From Octopus bimaculoides (taxonomy: Eukaryota), in NCBI RefSeq assembly GCF_001194135.2, contig NC_068988.1, positions 1,970,795 through 2,017,982 on the forward strand: a DNA stretch of 47,188 nt, read 5' to 3'. The translations under genes were made by a program, and so were the position numbers. The notes beneath the pieces are model-generated. The model was not told where the DNA came from. It searched no databases and was given only the letters and a program-made list of their open reading frames with translations. Position 1 is the stretch's first letter. Each line of letters opens with the position of its first letter. This document shows, in pieces, positions 1,144 through 34,973 of the stretch.

Positions 1144-1157
1144 ACTATAACTGAATT

Positions 1158-1461
1158 CGCGTGGCTCAGTGGTTAGTGTATTCAGCTTACGGTTTTAAGG
1201 TCATGAGTTCGATTCCCGGCAGCGCGTTGTGACATTGAGCAAGACACTTTTCTTCAGGTTGCTCCAGTCCACTCAGCAGGGAAAAATGAGTTGTGCCTGG
1301 AATTCAAAAGGCTTGTCACGTTCTGTGTCATGCTGAATCACCCTGAGAACTACGTTAAGAATACGCATGTCTGTGGAGTGCTCAGCCACTTGCACGTTAA
1401 GCTGGCTGTTCCGTTGATCGGATCAACTGGAACCCTGGTTGTCGTAACCGACGGAGCGCCA
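1158..1461 (+). mobile_element. tRNA-derived SINE family C, near full length
   Basis: A box gtggctcagtgg, B box gagttcgattccc, CORE-like ttgagcaagacact. The 3' half (gagaactacgttaag...ttccgttgatcggatcaactggaac...gtaaccgacgg) is shared with 34605-34973. Confidence 0.85.
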
Positions 1462-1468
1462 GTTAGTC

Positions 1469-1553
1469 GACAAATGGACGTAGCGTCAGGCTCTTTGCTT
1501 GGACGTATGCTTGGCTCTTTGCTTGGACAAATGGACGTAGTGTCATGCTCTTT
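1469..1553 (+). repeat. Short imperfect tandem duplication
   Basis: gacaaatggacgtag(c/t)gtca(g/t)gctcttt at 1469 and 1526, with a partial unit between. Confidence 0.7.
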
Positions 1554-9705: not shown

Positions 9706-10594
9706 GTATGCACAATATTGTTGTTAATCCGTGTGTAAGTGTGACTCTCCGCTTCCTCTTCCATCATCTCCTACTTCATCCCCCTCCTTAGTACAATCTG
9801 AATCCGCTGTTAAACGGCATCATCTGGACCGTTGCTGCCTTTAGCAGAATTCACTCCACTGCAATTATTCTATCCAAGACTTCAGCCTGAATATAGTTTC
9901 TTCCTATTCGCCTTATTTCTTTCAGAGGTCTTGAAATATGCACAGAATGTGCTATGTCTGTTATCTTTCTGACCACAAACAGCCAAATGGCTATTAAAGC
10001 GAACTTACACAAGTCCTTACCATAGGTTTCGTTATCTGCTTTAAATGATATCGCATTATATATATATATATNNNNNNNNNNNNNNNNNNNNNNNNNNNNN
10101 NNNNNNNNNNNNNNNNNNNNNNNNNNNNNNNNNNNNNNNNNNNNNNNNNNNNNNNNNNNNNNNNNNNNNNNNNNNNNNNNNNNNNNNNNNNNNNNNNNNN
10201 NNNNNNNNNNNNNNNNNNNNNNNNNNNNNNNNNNNNNNNNNNNNNNNNNNNNNNNNNNNNNNNNNNNNNNNNNNNNNNNNNNNNNNNNNNNNNNNNNNNN
10301 NNNNNNNNNNNNNNNNNNNNNNNNNNNNNNNNNNNNNNNNNNNNNNNNNNNNNNNNNNNNNNNNNNNNNNNNNNNNNNNNNNNNNNNNNNNNNNNNNNNN
10401 NNNNNNNNNNNNNNNNNNNNNNNNNNNNNNNNNNNNNNNNNNNNNNNNNNNNNNNNNNNNNNNNNNNNNNNNNNNNNNNNNNNNNNNNNNNNNNNNNNNN
10501 NNNNNNNNNNNNNNNNNNNNNNNNNNNNNNNNNNNNNNNNNNNNNNNNNNNNNNNNNNNNNNNNNNNNNNNNNNNNNNNNNNNNNNNNNNNNNN

Positions 10595-10690
10595 GTTTAG
10601 AAGCATAGTTGAAGACACTCGACTGACACGCTGCGCAGCAGGATTGAACCATAAGCCACGTGGTTGCAAAGAGAGCCTCTTCACCATACA
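10595..10690 (-). mobile_element. SINE family B, 5' part next to a gap
   Basis: gcatagttgaagacact...gcgcagcaggattgaacc...ccacgtggttgc...accataca resembles the family B head. Confidence 0.6.
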
Positions 10691-10785
10691 GACATACATA
10701 TGGAACACAAAGAAATATTTTCAACAGAAAATACGTCATAAAAATCCTGTCTTGGGAGGGTCATTACGCCAATGACGATTTCAGA

Positions 10786-12744: not shown

Positions 12745-13513
12745 CTGAAGATATTCCTCAGATCACAAGCATTACGGTATTATATACCGATGATACACGA
12801 CGTTGTAGCTAGGACACTCTATAATGAAATCCGCCGGAAGGAAAATCCCAAGGACAAGCCCACAAAATGCTAGAAGCCATAACCACTCATAATAAAAAGG
12901 AATACTGGTGGAATGTCCCAGTGAAGACCTCAATAAAATGTAAGCACAACAGACCTGATATTATGTTTTGGGATGGAGAAGAGAAACTATGCACAGTTGT
13001 GGAAATCAGCTGCCCAGCGGATGTTAACATGAAGCTGAAGATCAGTGAAAAAGAGAACACCTATGATGAACTATTGAGAAATCTGCAGTTACTCTATCCA
13101 GATTACAAGTCGAGGTTTATACCTGTAATTATTGGAGTCCTGGGGTATGTAACACACTGCCTAAATATCAATCTTGTAAACTTATGCTTTTCAAAACCAG
13201 AAAGGAGAAAGCTAATTCGAAGACTACAGATCCAATCCATCACTGGAACTGTAAAAATCTGTAAAACTTTTCAGAAGTTTATCATTTAAATATATATGAG
13301 GATGTCTAGACATGCAACTATATACATGAGAATGCATACATAAAACATACATACACACATACATACATACATACGTACATACATACATATATACATACAC
13401 ACATACAAAAACACCTTGTTGATGTTGAAATTCCAATGAAGGAGCATTGGATCTAGGATAGAAACCGATTCTTTCTCTATTGGCAAGAAATCTTGAAATA
13501 AACTGAATAATGA
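12745..13513 (+). mobile_element. 5'-truncated non-LTR retrotransposon with restriction-like endonuclease (R4/Dong- or NeSL-type)
   Basis: Post-zinc-knuckle motif RYYIPMIHDVVARTLYNEIR at ~12775-12833, the RLE ORF, then a 3' UTR with an internal (ATAC)n, ending in (ATAC)n. Confidence 0.8.
12867..13289 (+). pseudogene. C-terminal restriction-like endonuclease (PD..D/ExK) domain of a non-LTR retrotransposon
   Basis: 140-aa ORF with WWNVPVKT, KHNRPDIMFWD, VVEISCP, KENTYDEL, FIPVIIGVLG and QSITGTVKICK, typical of RLE C-termini; frameshifted relative to the upstream HDVVA motif. Confidence 0.85.
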
Positions 13514-14458
13514 TATACATACATACATACATACATACGCGCATACATGTTTTCATTCTTCAAAGTAATTCAAATGTACAATTGCTTCTACAGTCTATCG
13601 AATAGTAATTATGCAGCGGACGAGACTCAATTTGTTTTAACTATTGAAGCAGTTATGTATAAATACAGTTATGTATATTACAAGAAAAGCATCAACATCA
13701 CAACATCATCACATTGATTTCTTCTTTTTCCTTAATTTAATGAGGCTAATTATTTAATAGATATTTGAGAGAACGGAAATTCAAGTAATTATTACTTTCA
13801 CGTATGATAAATAAAATATCAATTGATTTTTTTTATTCTACTGAAAATAATTCGATGTCATTTTTAAGAAAAGTGTTCTTGTCACTTTAAGACTGTGTTT
13901 TGAAAATGTTCTTTGTTTTCTTGACTTTGTTTAACATAGGTTATCATCTCTTTGCTAAAGTAGAGGAAGTTGAGTTAATCTTTGTCTGATCTCTGGCTCG
14001 GTGAATCACCCATTCTCTAACACACATTCTTTTATCTATTTAAGAACGTATATGAATAAAAACATCCCTGTAATACATACATACATGCATCAAAACAGGG
14101 GATTAGAATTTTTTTTGGTATTTATTCACCATTACCCGTGTTTCATTTCCTAACAAGTGTTACAAAATTTTACATGTAGTAGTAAGCATGTAAAATATTG
14201 TTAAATTTAGGGACGGTCATTTTTTTTTTTTTTTGCCAAATAAGCACACACTCTTTGCATTCGTTCTTCACTTCAGCATTATTATTGTTCTTATTCTTGT
14301 AAGAATAATAATAAAGCTGAAGTGAAGGACGAATATATGTATAGTGCATGTATTTATTTGGCAAAAAACAAAACAAAACAATCCCGAAATATAACAATAT
14401 CTACATCATTTACATTATTTACATTTGATGGATATTTGTCCTCATCTTGTTTGTTGTT

Positions 14459-14510
14459 AACACAACGTTTCGGCTGATATATCCCCACCCACCAGCCTTC
14501 ATCAGGTGTC
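14459..14510 (-). ncRNA. Minimal type-I hammerhead ribozyme (family 1), core intact
   Basis: Minus strand: gacac CTGATGA a ggctg-loop-cagcc GAAAC GTT gtgtt. Stem I gacac/gtgtt, stem II ggctg/cagcc, palindromic AACGTT stem III; predicted cut between 14464 and 14463. Confidence 0.8.
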
Positions 14511-14617
14511 TTGGGAAAATTTCAAACCTAGGTTCTCATTCCTAAGGTATTTTTCGATGCCATTATTATTATTAATATTATTATTATTATTATCATTATT
14601 ATTATTATTATTATTAT

Positions 14618-14693
14618 TCAGGTCACTGCTTGGAATCGAACTCGGAATCTTGGGGTCAGTAGCCCGCGCTCTTAACCACTACGTCATATGCCC
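14618..14693 (-). promoter_or_regulatory. tRNA-like SINE head with internal Pol III promoter
   Basis: Minus strand gggcatatgacgtagtggttaagagcgcgggctactgaccccaagattccgagttcgattccaagcagtgacc; A box at 14676-14686, B box at 14632-14643. Confidence 0.85.
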
Positions 14694-14699
14694 GTGGGC

Positions 14700-14793
<94 letters not shown>

Positions 14794-14884
14794 TAATAAT
14801 AATAATGATGATGATGATGATAATAATAATGATAACATCGAAAAATACCTTAGGAATGAGAAACCAGGTTCGAAACTTCCCCAA

Positions 14885-14930
14885 GACTTCTGATGAAGGC
14901 TGGAGGGTATATCAGCTGAAATGTTGTGTT
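14885..14930 (+). ncRNA. Decayed hammerhead (family 1) in the right arm
   Basis: gactt CTGATGA aggctg...cagct GAAA tgtt gtgtt; stem I and the stem III C are mutated relative to the other copies. Confidence 0.6.
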
Positions 14931-15438
14931 AACAACAAACAAGATGAGGACAAATATCCGTCAAATGTAAACAATGTAAATAACGCACATAATTCCTCAT
15001 CTCTTAAATATAGAACTATAACAATATCTGTATCGACGCACAAACTCACATCAGGGAAGTTGCAAAACAAATATATGATCTAAAATGTAAGACATCCCTT
15101 TTGGAAACTTTTTAGATAGAGACTTAAATCATAGAGAAAGAGGAAGTGGTGTTTGATTTTCTGTCTAAAGAATTTCTAAGAAGCGTTATCTTACAGGTTT
15201 TCTACTACAGGTACAATTTTCTAACACTTCTTAGCAAATGAAACACGTGTAATCGTGAATAGATAATACCCCCCCCCCACGTTTTTTTTCCAATCTCCTG
15301 TTTTGTTACATAATTACTATGCAAAACATATTTTCCAGTATTCTGAACTTTTATGCATACCTCACACAAATAGAACATCTACATAGAGATTTGGAACACT
15401 GAAACAAGCAAAGAGGTCACTGCTTGGAATTTAACCTT

Positions 15439-30676: not shown

Positions 30677-31543
30677 NNNNNNNNNNNNNNNNNNNNNNNN
30701 NNNNNNNNNNNNNNNNNNNNNNNNNNNNNNNNNNNNNNNNNNNNNNNNNNNNNNNNNNNNNNNNNNNNNNNNNNNNNNNNNNNNNNNNNNNNNNNNNNNN
30801 NNNNNNNNNNNNNNNNNNNNNNNNNNNNNNNNNNNNNNNNNNNNNNNNNNNNNNNNNNNNNNNNNNNNNNNNNNNNNNNNNNNNNNNNNNNNNNNNNNNN
30901 NNNNNNNNNNNNNNNNNNNNNNNNNNNNNNNNNNNNNNNNNNNNNNNNNNNNNNNNNNNNNNNNNNNNNNNNNNNNNNNNNNNNNNNNNNNNNNNNNNNN
31001 NNNNNNNNNNNNNNNNNNNNNNNNNNNNNNNNNNNNNNNNNNNNNNNNNNNNNNNNNNNNNNNNNNNNNNNNNNNNNNNNNNNNNNNNNNNNNNNNNNNN
31101 NNNNNNNNNNNNNNNNNNNNNNNNNNNNNNNNNNNNNNNNNNNNNNNNNNNNNNNNNNNNNNNNNNNNNNNNNNNNNNNNNNNNNNNNNNNNNNNNNNNN
31201 NNNNNNNNNNNNNNNNNNNNNNNNNNNNNNNNNNNNNNNNNNNNNNNNNNNNNNNNNNNNNNNNNNNNNNNNNNNNNNNNNNNNNNNNNNNNNNNNNNNN
31301 NNNNNNNNNNNNNNNNNNNNNNNNNNNNNNNNNNNNNNNNNNNNNNNNNNNNNNNNNNNNNNNNNNNNNNNNNNNNNNNNNNNNNNNNNNNNNNNNNNNN
31401 NNNNNNNNNNNNNNNNNNNNNNNNNNNNNNNNNNNNNNNNNNNNNNNNNNNNNNNNNNNNNNNNNNNNNNNNNNNNNNNNNNNNNNNNNNNNNNNNNNNN
31501 NNNNNNAACCGGAACCTTTCTCTGTCGGACAAACGTATTGTAC

Positions 31544-31795
31544 AGTTCTATACTTAAGAGATGAGAAATTATGTACATTATTTACATTTGACGGATATTT
31601 GTCCTCATCTTGTTTGTTGTTAACACAATGTTTCGGCTGATATACCCTCCATTTCGGCTGATATACCTTAGGAATGAGAACCCAGATTCGAAATTTCCCC
31701 AAGACACCTGATGAAGGCTGAAGGGTATATCAGCCGAAACGTTGTGTTAACAACAAACAAGGTGAGGACAAATATCCGTCAAATCTAAATAATTT
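31544..31795. mobile_element. Second family-1 fold-back hammerhead element, centre deleted
   Basis: Left arm 31544-31650 (minus) and right arm 31663-31795 (plus) match the arms at 14402-15017; no tRNA head or (AAT)n. Confidence 0.88.
31703..31748 (+). ncRNA. Minimal type-I hammerhead ribozyme (family 1), core intact
   Basis: gacac CTGATGA a ggctg aagggtatat cagcc GAAAC GTT gtgtt; predicted cut between 31743 and 31744. Confidence 0.82.
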
Positions 31796-31954
31796 AGATA
31801 ATAAACGTATTGTAGTTCAGGCTTTCGCCGCTAGAAGCCACTTGATGCGACCTTCAGGCATCAGTCTGCTGACAGGCATTGTCAACCTAAGTCGTACTGC
31901 CACGTGGTATGTCTTTGTTTTGCAGTGCTTCTCCTCTGTTCGTCGATTTTTGCG

Positions 31955-33358: not shown

Positions 33359-34604
33359 ACATTAACCTGAGGTTGATGGAAGTTTTGTATGTTTCTATTA
33401 CATTAAAAGGGAAATTGGTCAGAACAGGAGATGCCTTATAAGAATTACTCCAGTAACCATAAAAGGAGATGGTTGCAAAGAGTAGAAACAGGTATTTCGT
33501 CTAAAACCACGCCTACTAATCGCCGGGCAGTTGGTGTTCCTCTTCAAGTTAGGGTTTATCTATGACAGAGCTGTGATCCCATTATTCCACATATCTGTAA
33601 TCTCCAATCTTGGTCATTAGCCTCGTTCAAAAGAGAGGGGAAGGTCCAATGAAACCAACTTACTCATGGTAATCAGTATAAAGATTAAAAAAAAAACCTT
33701 CGATTATGAAAACCCAGATGTTATAAATCCATTGTATCAGTTTTTGAAATCTTCAGTTTTTAAATTCTTCAGTGAATTCTTTGAAACCTTAATGTTATGA
33801 TTTCCAAATAAATATTTCAGCTCTAAATCACGGTACCTAATCATTTAGTATGACGTTTTTATTTATTAAGCCTGATTTGCGTGTATTTCTCCCACCAAAA
33901 TGGAACATTTAGAGAAAGCAAACAAAATGCGAGATATATTCTTGGATTGTTTAAATAAAATATACGAAATGAGATTTTATTCTGATTTCTGATGTGAAAG
34001 CATATCGTGAAACTAAGCCATAAATCCAAACACCAAAGTCGTTTTACTCTGGAATCGAGTAAAGTTTATACAGTTGCAAATAACAACATCAACGGTTACA
34101 GATATTTTAGAATTAATCATGTTATGTTACAGTTCAATGCAATCGATTCTCGTTGCTTCCAACTTGGTAATTGTTCTTTAGAGAGATAACCATAAATCTT
34201 CTTCTTGAAAGGAAAACAATTCGAAATTTACAGGACACTAATAAAGAACATCGGAGGCTTTTGTAGGGATAAGCGAACGTGTATAGTTTCTATATTGCTC
34301 AATATAAATGGGTTATGCTATGATTTCTGGTATTTCATAGCCTACCAAAATCGTAACTTATATTCCTCGTTAGAAATTAAGAAATAGAACCAATTCACAT
34401 TATATTTCGCTTGAATAATTTCCTCCTAAAACAATTGAATTAATATCCGGTTTAAGTTCGATTTTACCAAAAGTAGATATAGAAATAGTGTAAATCTTTT
34501 TGGCGCAACACCCACAGAACGAGAACAGGTTCGTTACTTATAAAGAAGCCTAGCTTTTATTTCACTCAACCATTCTTTAAATTATTCTTTAGAGGTGAAC
34601 AAGT

Positions 34605-34973
34605 GGAGGCGCAATGGCTCAGTGGTTAGGGCAGCGGACTCGCGATCTTAGGATCGTAGTTTCGATTCCCAGACCGGGCATTGTGAGTGTTTATTGAGCG
34701 AAAACACCTATAGCTCTGCGAGGCTCCGGCTCCGGCCGGGGGTGGCTGGTGAACCCTGCTGTACTCTTTCTCTCACTCTTTGTTTCTGTTGTACCTGTAT
34801 TTCAAAAGGGCCAGCCTTGTCACACTCTGTGTCAGGCTGAATCTCCCCGAGAACTACGTTAAGGGTACACGTGTCTGTGGAGTTCTCAGCCACTTGCACG
34901 TTAATTTCACGAGCAGGCTGTTCCGTTGATCGGATCAACTGGAACACTCGTCGTCGTAACCGACGGGATGCCA
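34605..34973 (+). mobile_element. tRNA-derived SINE family C variant, full length
   Basis: ggaggcgcaatggctcagtggttagg (A box), gtttcgattccc (B box); 3' half shared with 1158-1461, different middle. Confidence 0.88.

What the first reader, a model, noticed from the sequence alone, without database searches (positions are those of the whole stretch)
14402..14700. tRNA-promoter SINE whose 3' tail is a Penelope-type pLTR carrying an intact hammerhead ribozyme
Seen on the minus strand: a tRNA-like head with A and B boxes (14693-14618), an (AAT)n linker, then a ~155-bp tail containing gacac-CTGATGA-a-ggctg..cagcc-GAAACGTT-gtgtt. Established: minimal type-I hammerheads with a palindromic, loop-less stem III are typical of Penelope-like element pLTRs and were reported to cleave as dimers (Cervera and de la Pena 2014; Lunse et al. 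2017). An extra A after A9 also occurs in the CChMVd hammerhead. SINEs normally borrow a LINE 3' tail. Inference: this is a Pol III-transcribed, self-cleaving SINE that parasitises a Penelope RT, a hybrid of SINE and retrozyme. I cannot confirm that it is undescribed.
Basis: partly seen in the sequence, partly recalled or inferred. Interest (0 to 1): 0.9.

Follow-up and report, generated by a model that had tools for sequence, protein, structure and literature searches.

The report
Octopus SINE with Penelope-type hammerhead tail
This is a short non-coding mobile element in the Octopus bimaculoides genome that starts with a tRNA-like promoter, ends in a minimal hammerhead-ribozyme module, and was inserted in the inverted-pair fashion typical of Penelope-like retrotransposons, so it is probably a SINE that uses a Penelope enzyme instead of a LINE enzyme.

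Summary
On the minus strand there is an 8-nt leader, a 75-nt tRNA-like head with A and B boxes (14701..14619), an (AAT)n linker (14618..14563) and a 160-nt tail (14562..14403). The tail carries a complete minimal type-I hammerhead (14510..14459).

The whole insertion spans 14390-15029. It consists of a 13-bp target-site duplication, the sense copy, a head-to-head inverted 5'-truncated second copy (14702-15016) with a 30-nt one-sided extension, and the second copy of the duplication. A second pair with the same layout lies at 31531-31814, and two more occur in public octopus-like contigs. This layout matches the published signature of Penelope-like element (PLE) insertions.

The hammerhead has every published hallmark of PLE minimal hammerheads, including the extra base after A9.

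Head and tail being one unit is only partly shown. One independent locus (L012) shares the first 12-20 nt of the head, joined to an A-rich linker and the tail, but it lacks both boxes. A related family in another organism (L014) also places tRNA-like boxes directly upstream of a homologous hammerhead module.

Not tested: homology to an autonomous PLE, Pol III transcription, cleavage, and Dfam/Repbase status.

Verdict: real, a new variant of known kinds, moderately interesting.

The parts
14390..14402 (.). Left copy of the 13-bp target-site duplication TATAACAATATCT
   Evidence: Exact direct repeat with 15017-15029 at the two outer ends of the inverted pair (family D4).
14403..14562 (-). Tail of the sense (full-length) arm A. 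It is 160 nt long and lacks the 30-nt extension.
   Evidence: 88% identical to B, 88% to C and 94% to D. nhmmer E=1e-45.
14459..14510 (-). Intact minimal type-I hammerhead. Helix I is GACAC/GUGUU. The core is CUGAUGA plus a bulged A. Helix II is GGCUG../..CAGCC. Then come GAAA, a palindromic C15.2-G16.2, and U17. The predicted cut is at 14464/14463.
   Evidence: Descriptor hit with 0.003 expected by chance. Features match the PLE minimal-hammerhead criteria of PMC4209133. No Rfam hit.
14516..14519 (-). TTTT run private to copy A, just upstream of the hammerhead. It is a possible Pol III terminator.
   Evidence: Copies B, C, L001, L010 and L012 have at most 3 T here.
14563..14618 (-). (AAT)n linker of arm A, about 18 units
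   Evidence: Tandem Repeats Finder. An AAT- or A-rich microsatellite also precedes the tail in arm B, L001 and L012.
14619..14693 (-). 75-nt tRNA-like head with the A box (14686..14676) and the B box (14642..14632)
   Evidence: A/B composite has 0.018 expected by chance. Similar to the heads of the SINEs at 1150 and 34600, shuffle p=0.001 and 0.006. Not a tRNA by ARAGORN or Rfam.
14694..14701 (-). 8-nt leader ATGCCCAC, the probable 5' end of the template RNA
   Evidence: Shared in part with L012, where TTACCGAA precedes GGGCATATGGCG. It directly abuts the inverted arm's microsatellite.
14702..14835 (+). (AAT)n of the inverted arm B, about 45 units. Arm B is 5'-truncated inside the linker.
   Evidence: Tandem Repeats Finder. 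Inverted repeats I1 and I3.
14836..14986 (+). Tail of the inverted arm B. Its hammerhead (14885-14930) is decayed by CpG-to-TpG changes: CAGCU, GAAAU, and a helix I mismatch.
14987..15016 (+). 30-nt 3' extension ACATAATTCCTCATCTCTTAAATATAGAAC, present only on the inverted arm
   Evidence: Also present on arm D, on the left arm of L012, on both arms of L010, and in proteins P0001, P0020 and P0042. It matches the one-sided 30-40-bp 'tail' of PLE insertions (PMC8557442).
15017..15029 (.). Right copy of the 13-bp target-site duplication
31531..31542 (.). Second locus: left copy of the 12-bp target-site duplication AAACGTATTGTA
   Evidence: The same 12-mer occurs at 31803-31814.
31543..31647 (-). 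Second locus: inverted arm D. It is 5'-truncated inside hammerhead helix II, carries the extension, and has a 17-nt internal duplication at its inner end.
31648..31802 (+). Second locus: sense arm C. It starts near tail position 13, lacks the extension, and has an intact hammerhead at 31703-31748. An ATACC microhomology sits at the D/C junction.
31803..31814 (.). Second locus: right copy of the 12-bp target-site duplication

Best explanation
Positions 14390-15029 are one retrotransposition event of a roughly 300-nt non-coding retroelement of Octopus bimaculoides.

The template RNA (inferred) ran from a leader and a tRNA-like head through an (AAU)n linker to a 160-190-nt tail. The head carries internal Pol III A and B boxes, so the master copy was most likely transcribed by Pol III, as in a tRNA-derived SINE.

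The tail is the 3' module that a Penelope-like element (PLE) reverse transcriptase/GIY-YIG endonuclease uses. This follows from how the copy was inserted: a sense copy, a second 5'-truncated copy joined head-to-head in inverted orientation, a 30-nt extension on one outer end only, microhomologies at the junctions, and a 12-13-bp target-site duplication.

The minimal hammerhead and the 30 or so nt after it form the conserved core of that module. I take their main role to be recognition or priming by the PLE enzyme. Cleavage is possible only when two RNAs pair through the ACGU palindrome of helix III, and it is not needed to make the copies seen here.

Copy A itself is probably dead. It has a T4 run before the hammerhead and an A-box mismatch.

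Shown: the anatomy, the repeat family, the insertion architecture, the duplications and the hammerhead features. Inferred: Pol III transcription, PLE dependence and the role of the hammerhead.
For: Insertion architecture:
- The 13-bp and 12-bp duplications flank the whole inverted pairs, not the single arms.
- The layout 'inverted truncated arm with extension, plus longer sense arm without extension' recurs at A/B, D/C and L012. An older pair in L010 has the extension on both arms.
- Craig et al. 2021 describe exactly these traits for PLE insertions (PMC8557442). Cervera and de la Pena 2014 noted dual minimal hammerheads 100-700 bp apart on opposite strands.

Hammerhead:
[quoted passage not shown] All are listed as PLE minimal-hammerhead traits.

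Head:
- The A/B boxes are 0.018 expected by chance.
- The head is homologous to other octopus SINE heads.
- It begins 8 nt after the inner junction, as expected for a Pol III start.

Head and tail as one unit:
- L012 is an independent insertion with duplication ATAAATAGTA. It has GGGCATATGGCG, 11 of 12 matching, at the 5' end of its long arm, before an A-rich linker and the tail.
- That 12-mer with at most one mismatch occurs elsewhere only once in 262 kb of both strands searched.
- L014, from an unidentified organism, has two A/B-box modules directly upstream of a tandem dimer of hammerhead units (4 composites in the locus against 0.03 expected). Its hammerhead units are 72-78% identical to the octopus hammerhead plus downstream region.
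- At least five diverged ORF clusters span that box-to-hammerhead junction.

Host context:
- PLEs are reported to be active in Octopus (PMC13282606).
Against: - Only one copy with the whole head was found. L012 lacks both boxes, and its alignment to the rest of the head needs four deletions (shuffle p=0.009-0.02).
- A search with head-derived peptides found nothing.
- About 50 kb of other DNA (L002, L008, L009), of which only L008 (20 kb) is confirmed Octopus (O. vulgaris), holds no copy.
- No autonomous PLE was available, so homology between the tail and a pLTR was not tested.
- No hammerhead or tRNA family of Rfam matches.
- Two of three other long arms stop at tail positions 4-13, so a tail-only unit may also be mobile.
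- Genomic copies show no extra conservation of the hammerhead core over the 3' flank.
Confidence: 0.6

Rival explanations
1. The head is not part of the family. It would be a one-off capture: the PLE enzyme switched template onto a tRNA-like SINE RNA at the end of reverse transcription, or a small tRNA-like retrocopy later landed in the internal (AAT)n. The mobile unit would then be only the linker and tail, a promoter-less PLE-derived hammerhead repeat.
For: - Only one full head was found in all the DNA read.
- The head is exactly tRNA-sized and resembles the heads of abundant octopus SINEs. A 17-nt exact piece of it lies in another context at 15414-15430.
- Arms C and L010R end at tail positions 4-13.
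- The head peptide search was empty.
Against: - L012 shares the first 12-20 nt of the head at the same structural position in an independent insertion. The chance of this is about 4e-4 for that spacer.
- L014-type elements show the same box-then-hammerhead order in several diverged copies.
- A later insertion into the microsatellite would not explain L012.
Confidence: 0.22
2. The tails are simply 5'-truncated copies of an autonomous PLE (its 3' UTR or pLTR). On this reading there is no separate non-autonomous family.
For: - PLE copies are heavily 5'-truncated, and minimal hammerheads mostly occur as dispersed single motifs.
- No partner sequence was available to exclude this.
Against: - The two longest arms (A and L012) end about 300 nt from the 3' end, at a leader and tRNA-like start. 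They do not continue into coding sequence.
- The tail-frame peptide hits only short ORFs, none with an RT or GIY-YIG domain.
- The window holds no RT ORF.
Confidence: 0.08
3. The inverted pairs are foldback DNA transposons or MITEs whose terminal inverted repeats happen to contain a hammerhead-like motif.
For: The arms are 86-90% complementary, and direct repeats flank them.
Against: - The outer termini are not symmetrical, because the extension is on one side only.
- The inner junctions differ in every copy and show microhomology.
- Duplication length varies (10, 12 and 13 bp).
- Arm lengths vary from 70 to about 320 nt.
Confidence: 0.03
4. The hammerhead does cleave in vivo, as RNA dimers. 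That cleavage would be an obligatory step of the life cycle, through processing or circularisation as in retrozymes.
For: - The core is perfect in the consensus and in copies A and C.
- PLE minimal hammerheads are reported to cleave weakly as dimers.
- Related units occur as tandem repeats in L014 and in proteins P0018 and P0025.
Against: - Arm A is a copy of an uncut RNA that spans the site.
- None of the four truncated arms starts at G1.1 (GUGUUAAC).
- The octopus copies are not tandem.
- Cleavage would separate the promoter head from the 3' end.
Confidence: 0.25

Closest known systems
Minimal type-I hammerheads of Penelope-like elements (Cervera and de la Pena 2014, PMC4209133; Lunse et al. 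2017, cited there)
   Same: - Core CUGANGA...GAAA.
- An extra nucleotide after A9, and a G10.1-C11.1 pair.
- Helix III reduced to a palindromic ACGU with no loop.
- A short helix I and a longer helix II.
- Dispersed single motifs, and pairs on opposite strands 100-700 bp apart.
   Different: Here the motif sits in a roughly 300-nt element that begins with a tRNA-like Pol III promoter, not in the pLTR of an RT-encoding element. No PLE ORF is nearby.
PLE insertion architecture (Craig, Yushenova, Rodriguez, Arkhipova 2021, PMC8557442)
   Same: - 5' truncation.
- An inverted 5'-truncated copy abutting the 5' end.
- A 30-40-bp extension at one end only.
- Association with microsatellites.
   Different: - There is no tandem pLTR in the octopus copies.
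- The microsatellite lies inside the element, not at the target.
- The target-site duplications are clear (10-13 bp).
SM-alpha SINE-like elements of Schistosoma (Ferbeyre et al. 1998, as summarised in PMC6765202 and PMC8490949)
   Same: A short non-coding retroelement with a Pol III promoter and a type-I hammerhead in the same transcript.
   Different: - SM-alpha has a canonical hammerhead with loops and occurs largely in tandem arrays.
- The octopus element has the PLE-type minimal hammerhead, a microsatellite linker, and inverted-pair insertions.
Metazoan non-LTR retrozymes (Cervera and de la Pena 2020, as summarised in PMC7761336; Li, Clavereau, Pollet 2026 preprint 10.64898/2026.07.22.740005)
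   Same: Non-autonomous, hammerhead-bearing, and proposed to depend on PLEs. The related L014 family is tandem.
   Different: - Retrozymes are defined by tandem head-to-tail units that yield circular RNAs, and no Pol III head is described for them.
- The octopus copies are dispersed monomers or inverted pairs.
Ordinary tRNA-derived SINEs of Octopus, the tRNA-Core and tRNA-Deu types (PMC8967140); examples in this window at 1150-1470 and 34600-34970
   Same: A tRNA-like head with A and B boxes, similar in sequence to this head.
   Different: Their bodies and tails are unrelated to this tail. They have no hammerhead and no inverted partner.

Membership tests
Hammerhead ribozyme, PLE-type minimal type I | Conserved core C3-U4-G5-A6-N7-G8-A9 ... 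G12-A13-A14, A15.1-U16.1, and H17 not G | tested here: met
   CUGAUGA ... GAAA-CG-U-U in copies A and C.
Hammerhead ribozyme, PLE-type minimal type I | Helices I and II base-paired around the core, open at helix I | tested here: met
   Helix I has 5 bp including one G-U. Helix II has 5-8 bp.
Hammerhead ribozyme, PLE-type minimal type I | Extra nucleotide between 9 and 10.1, a G10.1-C11.1 pair, and palindromic 15.2-16.2 with no or a tiny loop 3 (criteria of PMC4209133) | tested here: met
   The sequence reads A9-A-G10.1...C11.1-G12, and helix III is ACGU.
Hammerhead ribozyme (Rfam families Hammerhead_1, _3, _II, HH9, HH10) | Score against the curated covariance models | tested here: not met
   No hammerhead family matched at the gathering score or at E<=10. 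This is expected for motifs without helix III, but it is still a failed test.
Hammerhead ribozyme | Covariation that maintains the helices | tested here: inconclusive
   There is one compensatory pair in helix II: U-A in octopus against C-G in L014 unit 1 at 10.4/11.4. Too few independent sequences are available.
Hammerhead ribozyme | Site-specific self-cleavage | not testable with these tools
   The monomer fold pairs part of the core in its minimum-free-energy structure. An in vitro assay of monomer and dimer is needed.
tRNA-derived SINE (SINE2) | Internal Pol III promoter, with A and B boxes at tRNA positions, at the 5' end | tested here: met
   The A box is at positions 8-18 and the B box at 52-62 of the head, with one mismatch each. 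The chance expectation is 0.018.
tRNA-derived SINE (SINE2) | Head recognisably derived from a tRNA | tested here: inconclusive
   ARAGORN and Rfam give nothing, and there is no cloverleaf. The head is, however, similar to two other octopus SINE heads over 50 nt.
tRNA-derived SINE (SINE2) | Many copies in which head, body and tail are colinear | tested here: inconclusive
   There is one full copy. L012 shares only the first 12-20 nt plus the linker and tail. No octopus genome could be searched.
tRNA-derived SINE (SINE2) | 3' end shared with an autonomous partner that encodes the RT | not testable with these tools
   No octopus PLE or LINE 3' ends were available.
tRNA-derived SINE (SINE2) | Target-site duplications | tested here: met
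   Duplications of 13, 12 and 10 bp at three loci.
PLE-mobilised (non-autonomous) element | Inverted 5'-truncated copy adjoining the 5' end of the longer copy | tested here: met
   Seen at A/B, D/C, L010 and L012.
PLE-mobilised (non-autonomous) element | 30-40-bp extension at only one end of the insertion | tested here: met
   Three of four pairs show it. L010 has the extension on both arms.
PLE-mobilised (non-autonomous) element | Sequence similarity of the 3' end to an RT/GIY-YIG-encoding PLE of the same genome | not tested
   No PLE ORF lies in the window or in the fetched loci.
Non-LTR retrozyme | Tandem head-to-tail units, each with a hammerhead | tested here: not met
   The octopus copies are inverted or single. 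Only the related L014 family, and proteins P0018 and P0025, are tandem.

The most novel reading that the evidence does not exclude
A family of tRNA-headed, Pol III-driven SINEs depends on Penelope-like reverse transcriptases instead of LINEs. Its portable 3' 'handle' is a minimal hammerhead plus about 30 nt. The family has relatives of the same design (tRNA-like boxes followed by a homologous hammerhead module) in at least one other animal lineage. If so, PLEs have their own SINE class, and the hammerhead module is what the PLE enzyme recognises.
Probability: 0.35. Interest if true: 0.65.

Novelty: new variant of a known kind. Interest (0 to 1): 0.5.

Why it matters
SINEs are normally defined as parasites of LINEs. 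A tRNA-headed SINE that rides on Penelope-like elements would extend that partnership to a third retrotransposon class.

It would also give a small, natural substrate for studying two open questions raised in the PLE literature (PMC8557442, PMC4209133). One is how PLE enzymes choose and copy their templates, including the unexplained inverted pairs and one-sided extensions. The other is what the conserved minimal hammerhead is for.

There is a practical side as well. This repeat family leaves an open reading frame that has been annotated as 'proteins' in public sets. It also supplies the first exon of an annotated dystrobrevin-beta isoform.

Tried and rejected
Searches that found nothing:
- Exact-pattern scans of JGI metagenome and IMG/VR contigs for the tail and for the head: 0 hits.
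- Look-ups of window ORFs in the contig index: not on record. P0001 and P0008 were also not on record, and the P0003 gene was too long to fetch.
- About 50 kb of other loci, including 20 kb of O. vulgaris: no copy.
- Rfam at permissive thresholds on the window region and on L014: only noise such as snoRNA, CRISPR-DR and tmRNA fragments.
- Pfam on the tail peptide and on the 140-aa ORF: nothing meaningful.
- The run accessions of the Logan contigs appear in no paper, so their species is unknown.
- The Lunse 2017 and Ferbeyre 1998 papers are not held. They are cited only through reviews.

Uninformative:
- Dimer cofolding, because the minimum-free-energy structure is an extended duplex.

Ideas I dropped:
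- I first read ATGCCC-AC-GGGCAT as a junction palindrome marking the RNA 5' end. L012 shows that the upstream bases are part of the element's leader.
- I guessed from back-translation that the L014-type peptides encode an antisense B box. The L014 DNA shows sense-oriented boxes.
- The MITE/foldback reading was rejected because the termini are asymmetric and the junctions vary.
Full report
**1. What is in the sequence.**
Read on the minus strand, the region holds five parts in order:
- a leader ATGCCCAC (14701..14694);
- a 75-nt tRNA-sized head GGGCAUAUGACGUAGUGG...GUUCGAUUCCAAGCAGUGACCUG (14693..14619);
- an (AAT)n run (14618..14563; Tandem Repeats Finder);
- a 160-nt tail (14562..14403);
- a 13-bp sequence, TATAACAATATCT on the plus strand (14390-14402), that recurs exactly at 15017-15029.

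The A box TGACGTAGTGG (14686..14676) and the B box AGTTCGATTCC (14642..14632) sit at tRNA positions 8-18 and 52-62. Each has one mismatch to the consensus. A combined A/B pattern occurs twice in the window, here and in an ordinary SINE at 1162-1216. Shuffles give 0.018.

The head is not a tRNA by ARAGORN, even with thresholds lowered to 80%. It has no cloverleaf fold, and no Rfam tRNA model matches. It is, however, similar to the heads of two other SINEs in this window, with shuffle p=0.001 and 0.006 (sequences).

**2. The hammerhead.**
Positions 14510..14459 read GACAC-CUGAUGA-A-GGCUG(loop)CAGCC-GAAA-CG-U-U-GUGUU. My descriptor required the core, helices I and II of at least 4 bp, a palindromic helix III and H17. 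It finds two sites in the window, this one and its homologue at 31703-31748. First-order Markov shuffles give 0.003.

Cervera and de la Pena (PMC4209133) list features that emerged for PLE minimal hammerheads beyond their search descriptor:
- a G10.1-C11.1 pair;
- palindromic 15.2-16.2;
- a short helix I and a long helix II.

All are present here.

Rfam's hammerhead models do not match at any threshold. That is a failed membership test for those models, although they require a helix III that minimal variants lack. Cleavage was not and cannot be tested here.

**3.
BLAST of the tail against the window finds three more copies (alignment):
- B at 14836-15016 on the plus strand;
- C at 31648-31802 on the plus strand;
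- D at 31647..31543 on the minus strand.

A and B are head-to-head inverted arms, 86-90% complementary. Each is preceded, in its own sense, by (AAT)n. The 13-bp duplication flanks the pair, not the single arms. D and C form a second pair flanked by AAACGTATTGTA (31531-31542 and 31803-31814).

In both pairs the inverted arm is the more 5'-truncated one and carries an extra 30-odd nt at its 3' end (ACATAATTCCTCATCTCTTAAATATAGAAC). The longer sense arm lacks this extension. Junctions show microhomology: ATACC at D/C, and TTCGAA in L010.

Craig et al. (PMC8557442) describe this set for PLE insertions: heavy 5' truncation, an inverted 5'-truncated copy next to the 5' end, and a 30-40-bp extension often at only one end. 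Cervera and de la Pena noted dual minimal hammerheads on opposite strands 100-700 bp apart. The insertion architecture thus points to a PLE enzyme, independently of the hammerhead.

**4. Organism and family size.**
The tail consensus is open in one frame for 60 codons. Used as a protein query, it hits three things:
- an Octopus bimaculoides 'uncharacterized protein';
- the N-terminus of an annotated O. bimaculoides dystrobrevin-beta isoform;
- a Logan contig.

An exhaustive HMMER search finds 42 clusters of short ORFs of this kind.

Contigs fetched through these ORFs gave more copies:
- L001 is a decayed tail preceded by (AAT)n.
- L010/L011 is an old inverted pair with the extension on both arms.
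- L012/L013 is an inverted pair with duplication ATAAATAGTA. The extension is on the inverted arm only.

Octopus genomes are reported to be rich in tRNA-derived SINEs and to hold recently active PLE families (PMC8967140, PMC13282606).

**5. Do head and tail belong together?**
This is the crux, and it is only partly answered.

*For.* The linker is part of the element: a microsatellite precedes the tail in A, B, L001 and L012.

In L012 the long sense arm begins, right after the inverted arm, with TTACCGAAGGGCATATGGCG. In the window the corresponding sequence is ATGCCCACGGGCATATGACG. In L012 this is followed by about 130 nt of A-rich degenerate microsatellite and the tail.

The 12-mer GGGCATATGACG with at most one mismatch occurs only once elsewhere in 131 kb read on both strands. 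Its presence in that 160-nt spacer, in the right orientation and at the right end, has a chance of about 4e-4. Unrestricted shuffle tests give p=0.02 ungapped and 0.009 gapped. The duplications and flanks differ, so these are independent insertions from related templates.

L014, a contig of ENA assembly ERZ21867824 from an unknown organism, carries two A/B-box composites at 9885-9952 and 10002-10063. The locus has four in all against 0.03 expected. They lie directly upstream of a tandem dimer of 128-nt hammerhead units (10084-10340). An inverted hammerhead lies at 10722..10645.

The L014 hammerhead plus the next 30 or so nt is 72-78% identical to the octopus tail. The B-box-like AGTTCGAAGTTCC aligns with GGTTCGAAATTTCC in the octopus tail.

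At least five diverged ORF clusters (MANGIRTGDPRGFNKG.SSKFR.GSRVRQTPEEGW...) span that box-to-hammerhead junction. That order is therefore a family trait there.

*Against.*
- Only one octopus copy has the whole head.
- L012 lacks both boxes.
- A head-peptide search found nothing.
- Arms C and L010R stop at tail positions 4-13.
- A 17-nt piece of the head occurs in another context at 15414-15430.

I put about 0.7 on the head being an integral 5' part of the family. I put about 0.6 on the whole statement: a Pol III SINE mobilised by a PLE.

**6. How it most likely works.**
*Shown.* A roughly 300-nt RNA-like unit was copied into DNA twice at one target, in opposite orientations, with a 12-13-bp staggered target.

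*Inferred.*
- A master copy is transcribed by Pol III from the head.
- A PLE reverse transcriptase/GIY-YIG endonuclease engages the 3' module. One cDNA is primed from the very 3' end, which keeps the extension and is usually truncated. The other is primed about 30 nt further in, at an AT-rich site with microhomology to the target, and is the longer arm. The two are joined through microhomology.

*Role of the hammerhead.* The hammerhead and the following GUUGUGUUAACAACAAACAAGAUGAGGACAAAUAUCC are the best conserved part, both within octopus and between octopus and L014. This suggests a recognition role.

Obligatory cleavage is unlikely for four reasons:
- Arm A copies an uncut RNA.
- None of the four truncated arms begins at G1.1.
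- Helix III is 2 bp in a monomer.
- Cutting would detach the promoter from the 3' handle.

Copy A has a private T4 run (14519..14516) and is probably not a source copy. Copies B, D, L001 and L012 show CpG decay and core mutations. This is the neutral decay expected of dead copies.

**7. What is known, and what may be new.**
Already described:
- PLE minimal hammerheads, including thousands of dispersed ones (PMC4209133, PMC7761336).
- Pol III-driven SINE-like elements with hammerheads in Schistosoma (PMC6765202, PMC8490949).
- Non-autonomous PLE derivatives in Chlamydomonas.
- Non-LTR retrozymes as likely PLE dependants (preprint 10.64898/2026.07.22.740005).

Full-text searches found no description of a tRNA-headed SINE whose 3' module is a PLE-type hammerhead tail, in octopus or elsewhere. 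Dfam and Repbase could not be consulted, so 'undescribed' remains unproven.

I rate it a new variant of known kinds.

**8. Limits.**
- No octopus genome could be searched, so copy numbers are unknown.
- No octopus PLE was available.
- The species of the Logan runs and of the ENA contigs is unknown.

Noticed in passing
protein P0003 (NCBI, Octopus bimaculoides dystrobrevin beta isoform X1); no window coordinates: The first 33 or so residues of this annotated isoform (MPMGIWHSGEGWRVYQPKCCVNNKQDEDKYPSK) are a translation of a tail copy, including the hammerhead region. This repeat therefore supplies an annotated alternative first exon.
   Followed up: partly
public protein sets; P0001, P0002, P0018-P0056: One frame of the tail consensus is open for 60 codons. 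At least 42 clusters of short 'proteins' in public collections are translations of this repeat superfamily, some of them as tandem units of about 43 aa. This is annotation noise worth flagging.
   Followed up: partly
L014:9885-10722 (ENA ERZ21867824, unknown organism): A related element with two A/B-box modules, then a tandem dimer of 128-nt hammerhead units, then an inverted hammerhead about 300 nt downstream. Helix II shows one compensatory change relative to octopus, C-G for U-A.
   Followed up: partly
window 14221-14372: Immediately left of the insertion lies another head-to-head inverted duplication of about 75 nt per arm (TTTTTTGCCAAATAA...CTTCACTTCAGC...). It is centred near 14298 and belongs to an unrelated sequence family.
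   Followed up: no
window 14119-14197 and 15187-15265: The flanks of the whole insertion are themselves an 85% inverted repeat of 79 nt. The element therefore sits inside a larger foldback-like structure.
   Followed up: no
window 15414-15430: An exact 17-nt copy of the 3' part of the head (ATTCCAAGCAGTGACC on the minus strand) lies next to a (CA)n run, with no linker or tail after it. It may be a remnant of another element with the same head.
   Followed up: partly
window 1150-1470 and 34600-34970: Two ordinary octopus tRNA-derived SINE copies. Their heads differ, but they share a 3' body (..GAATCNCCCTGAGAACTACGTTAAG..CTGTTCCGTTGATCGGATCAACTGGAAC..). Neither has a hammerhead.
   Followed up: no
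window 12867-13289: A 140-aa ORF with relatives among short, mostly unnamed predicted proteins, including O. bimaculoides and O. vulgaris hypothetical proteins. It has no Pfam match. It is probably the C-terminal part of a retrotransposon protein.
   Followed up: partly
whole window: The window is a draft assembly with 3810 N in many gaps and a very high microsatellite load: (TA)n, (CA)n, (GA)n, (AAT)n. GC content is 33.5%.
   Followed up: no
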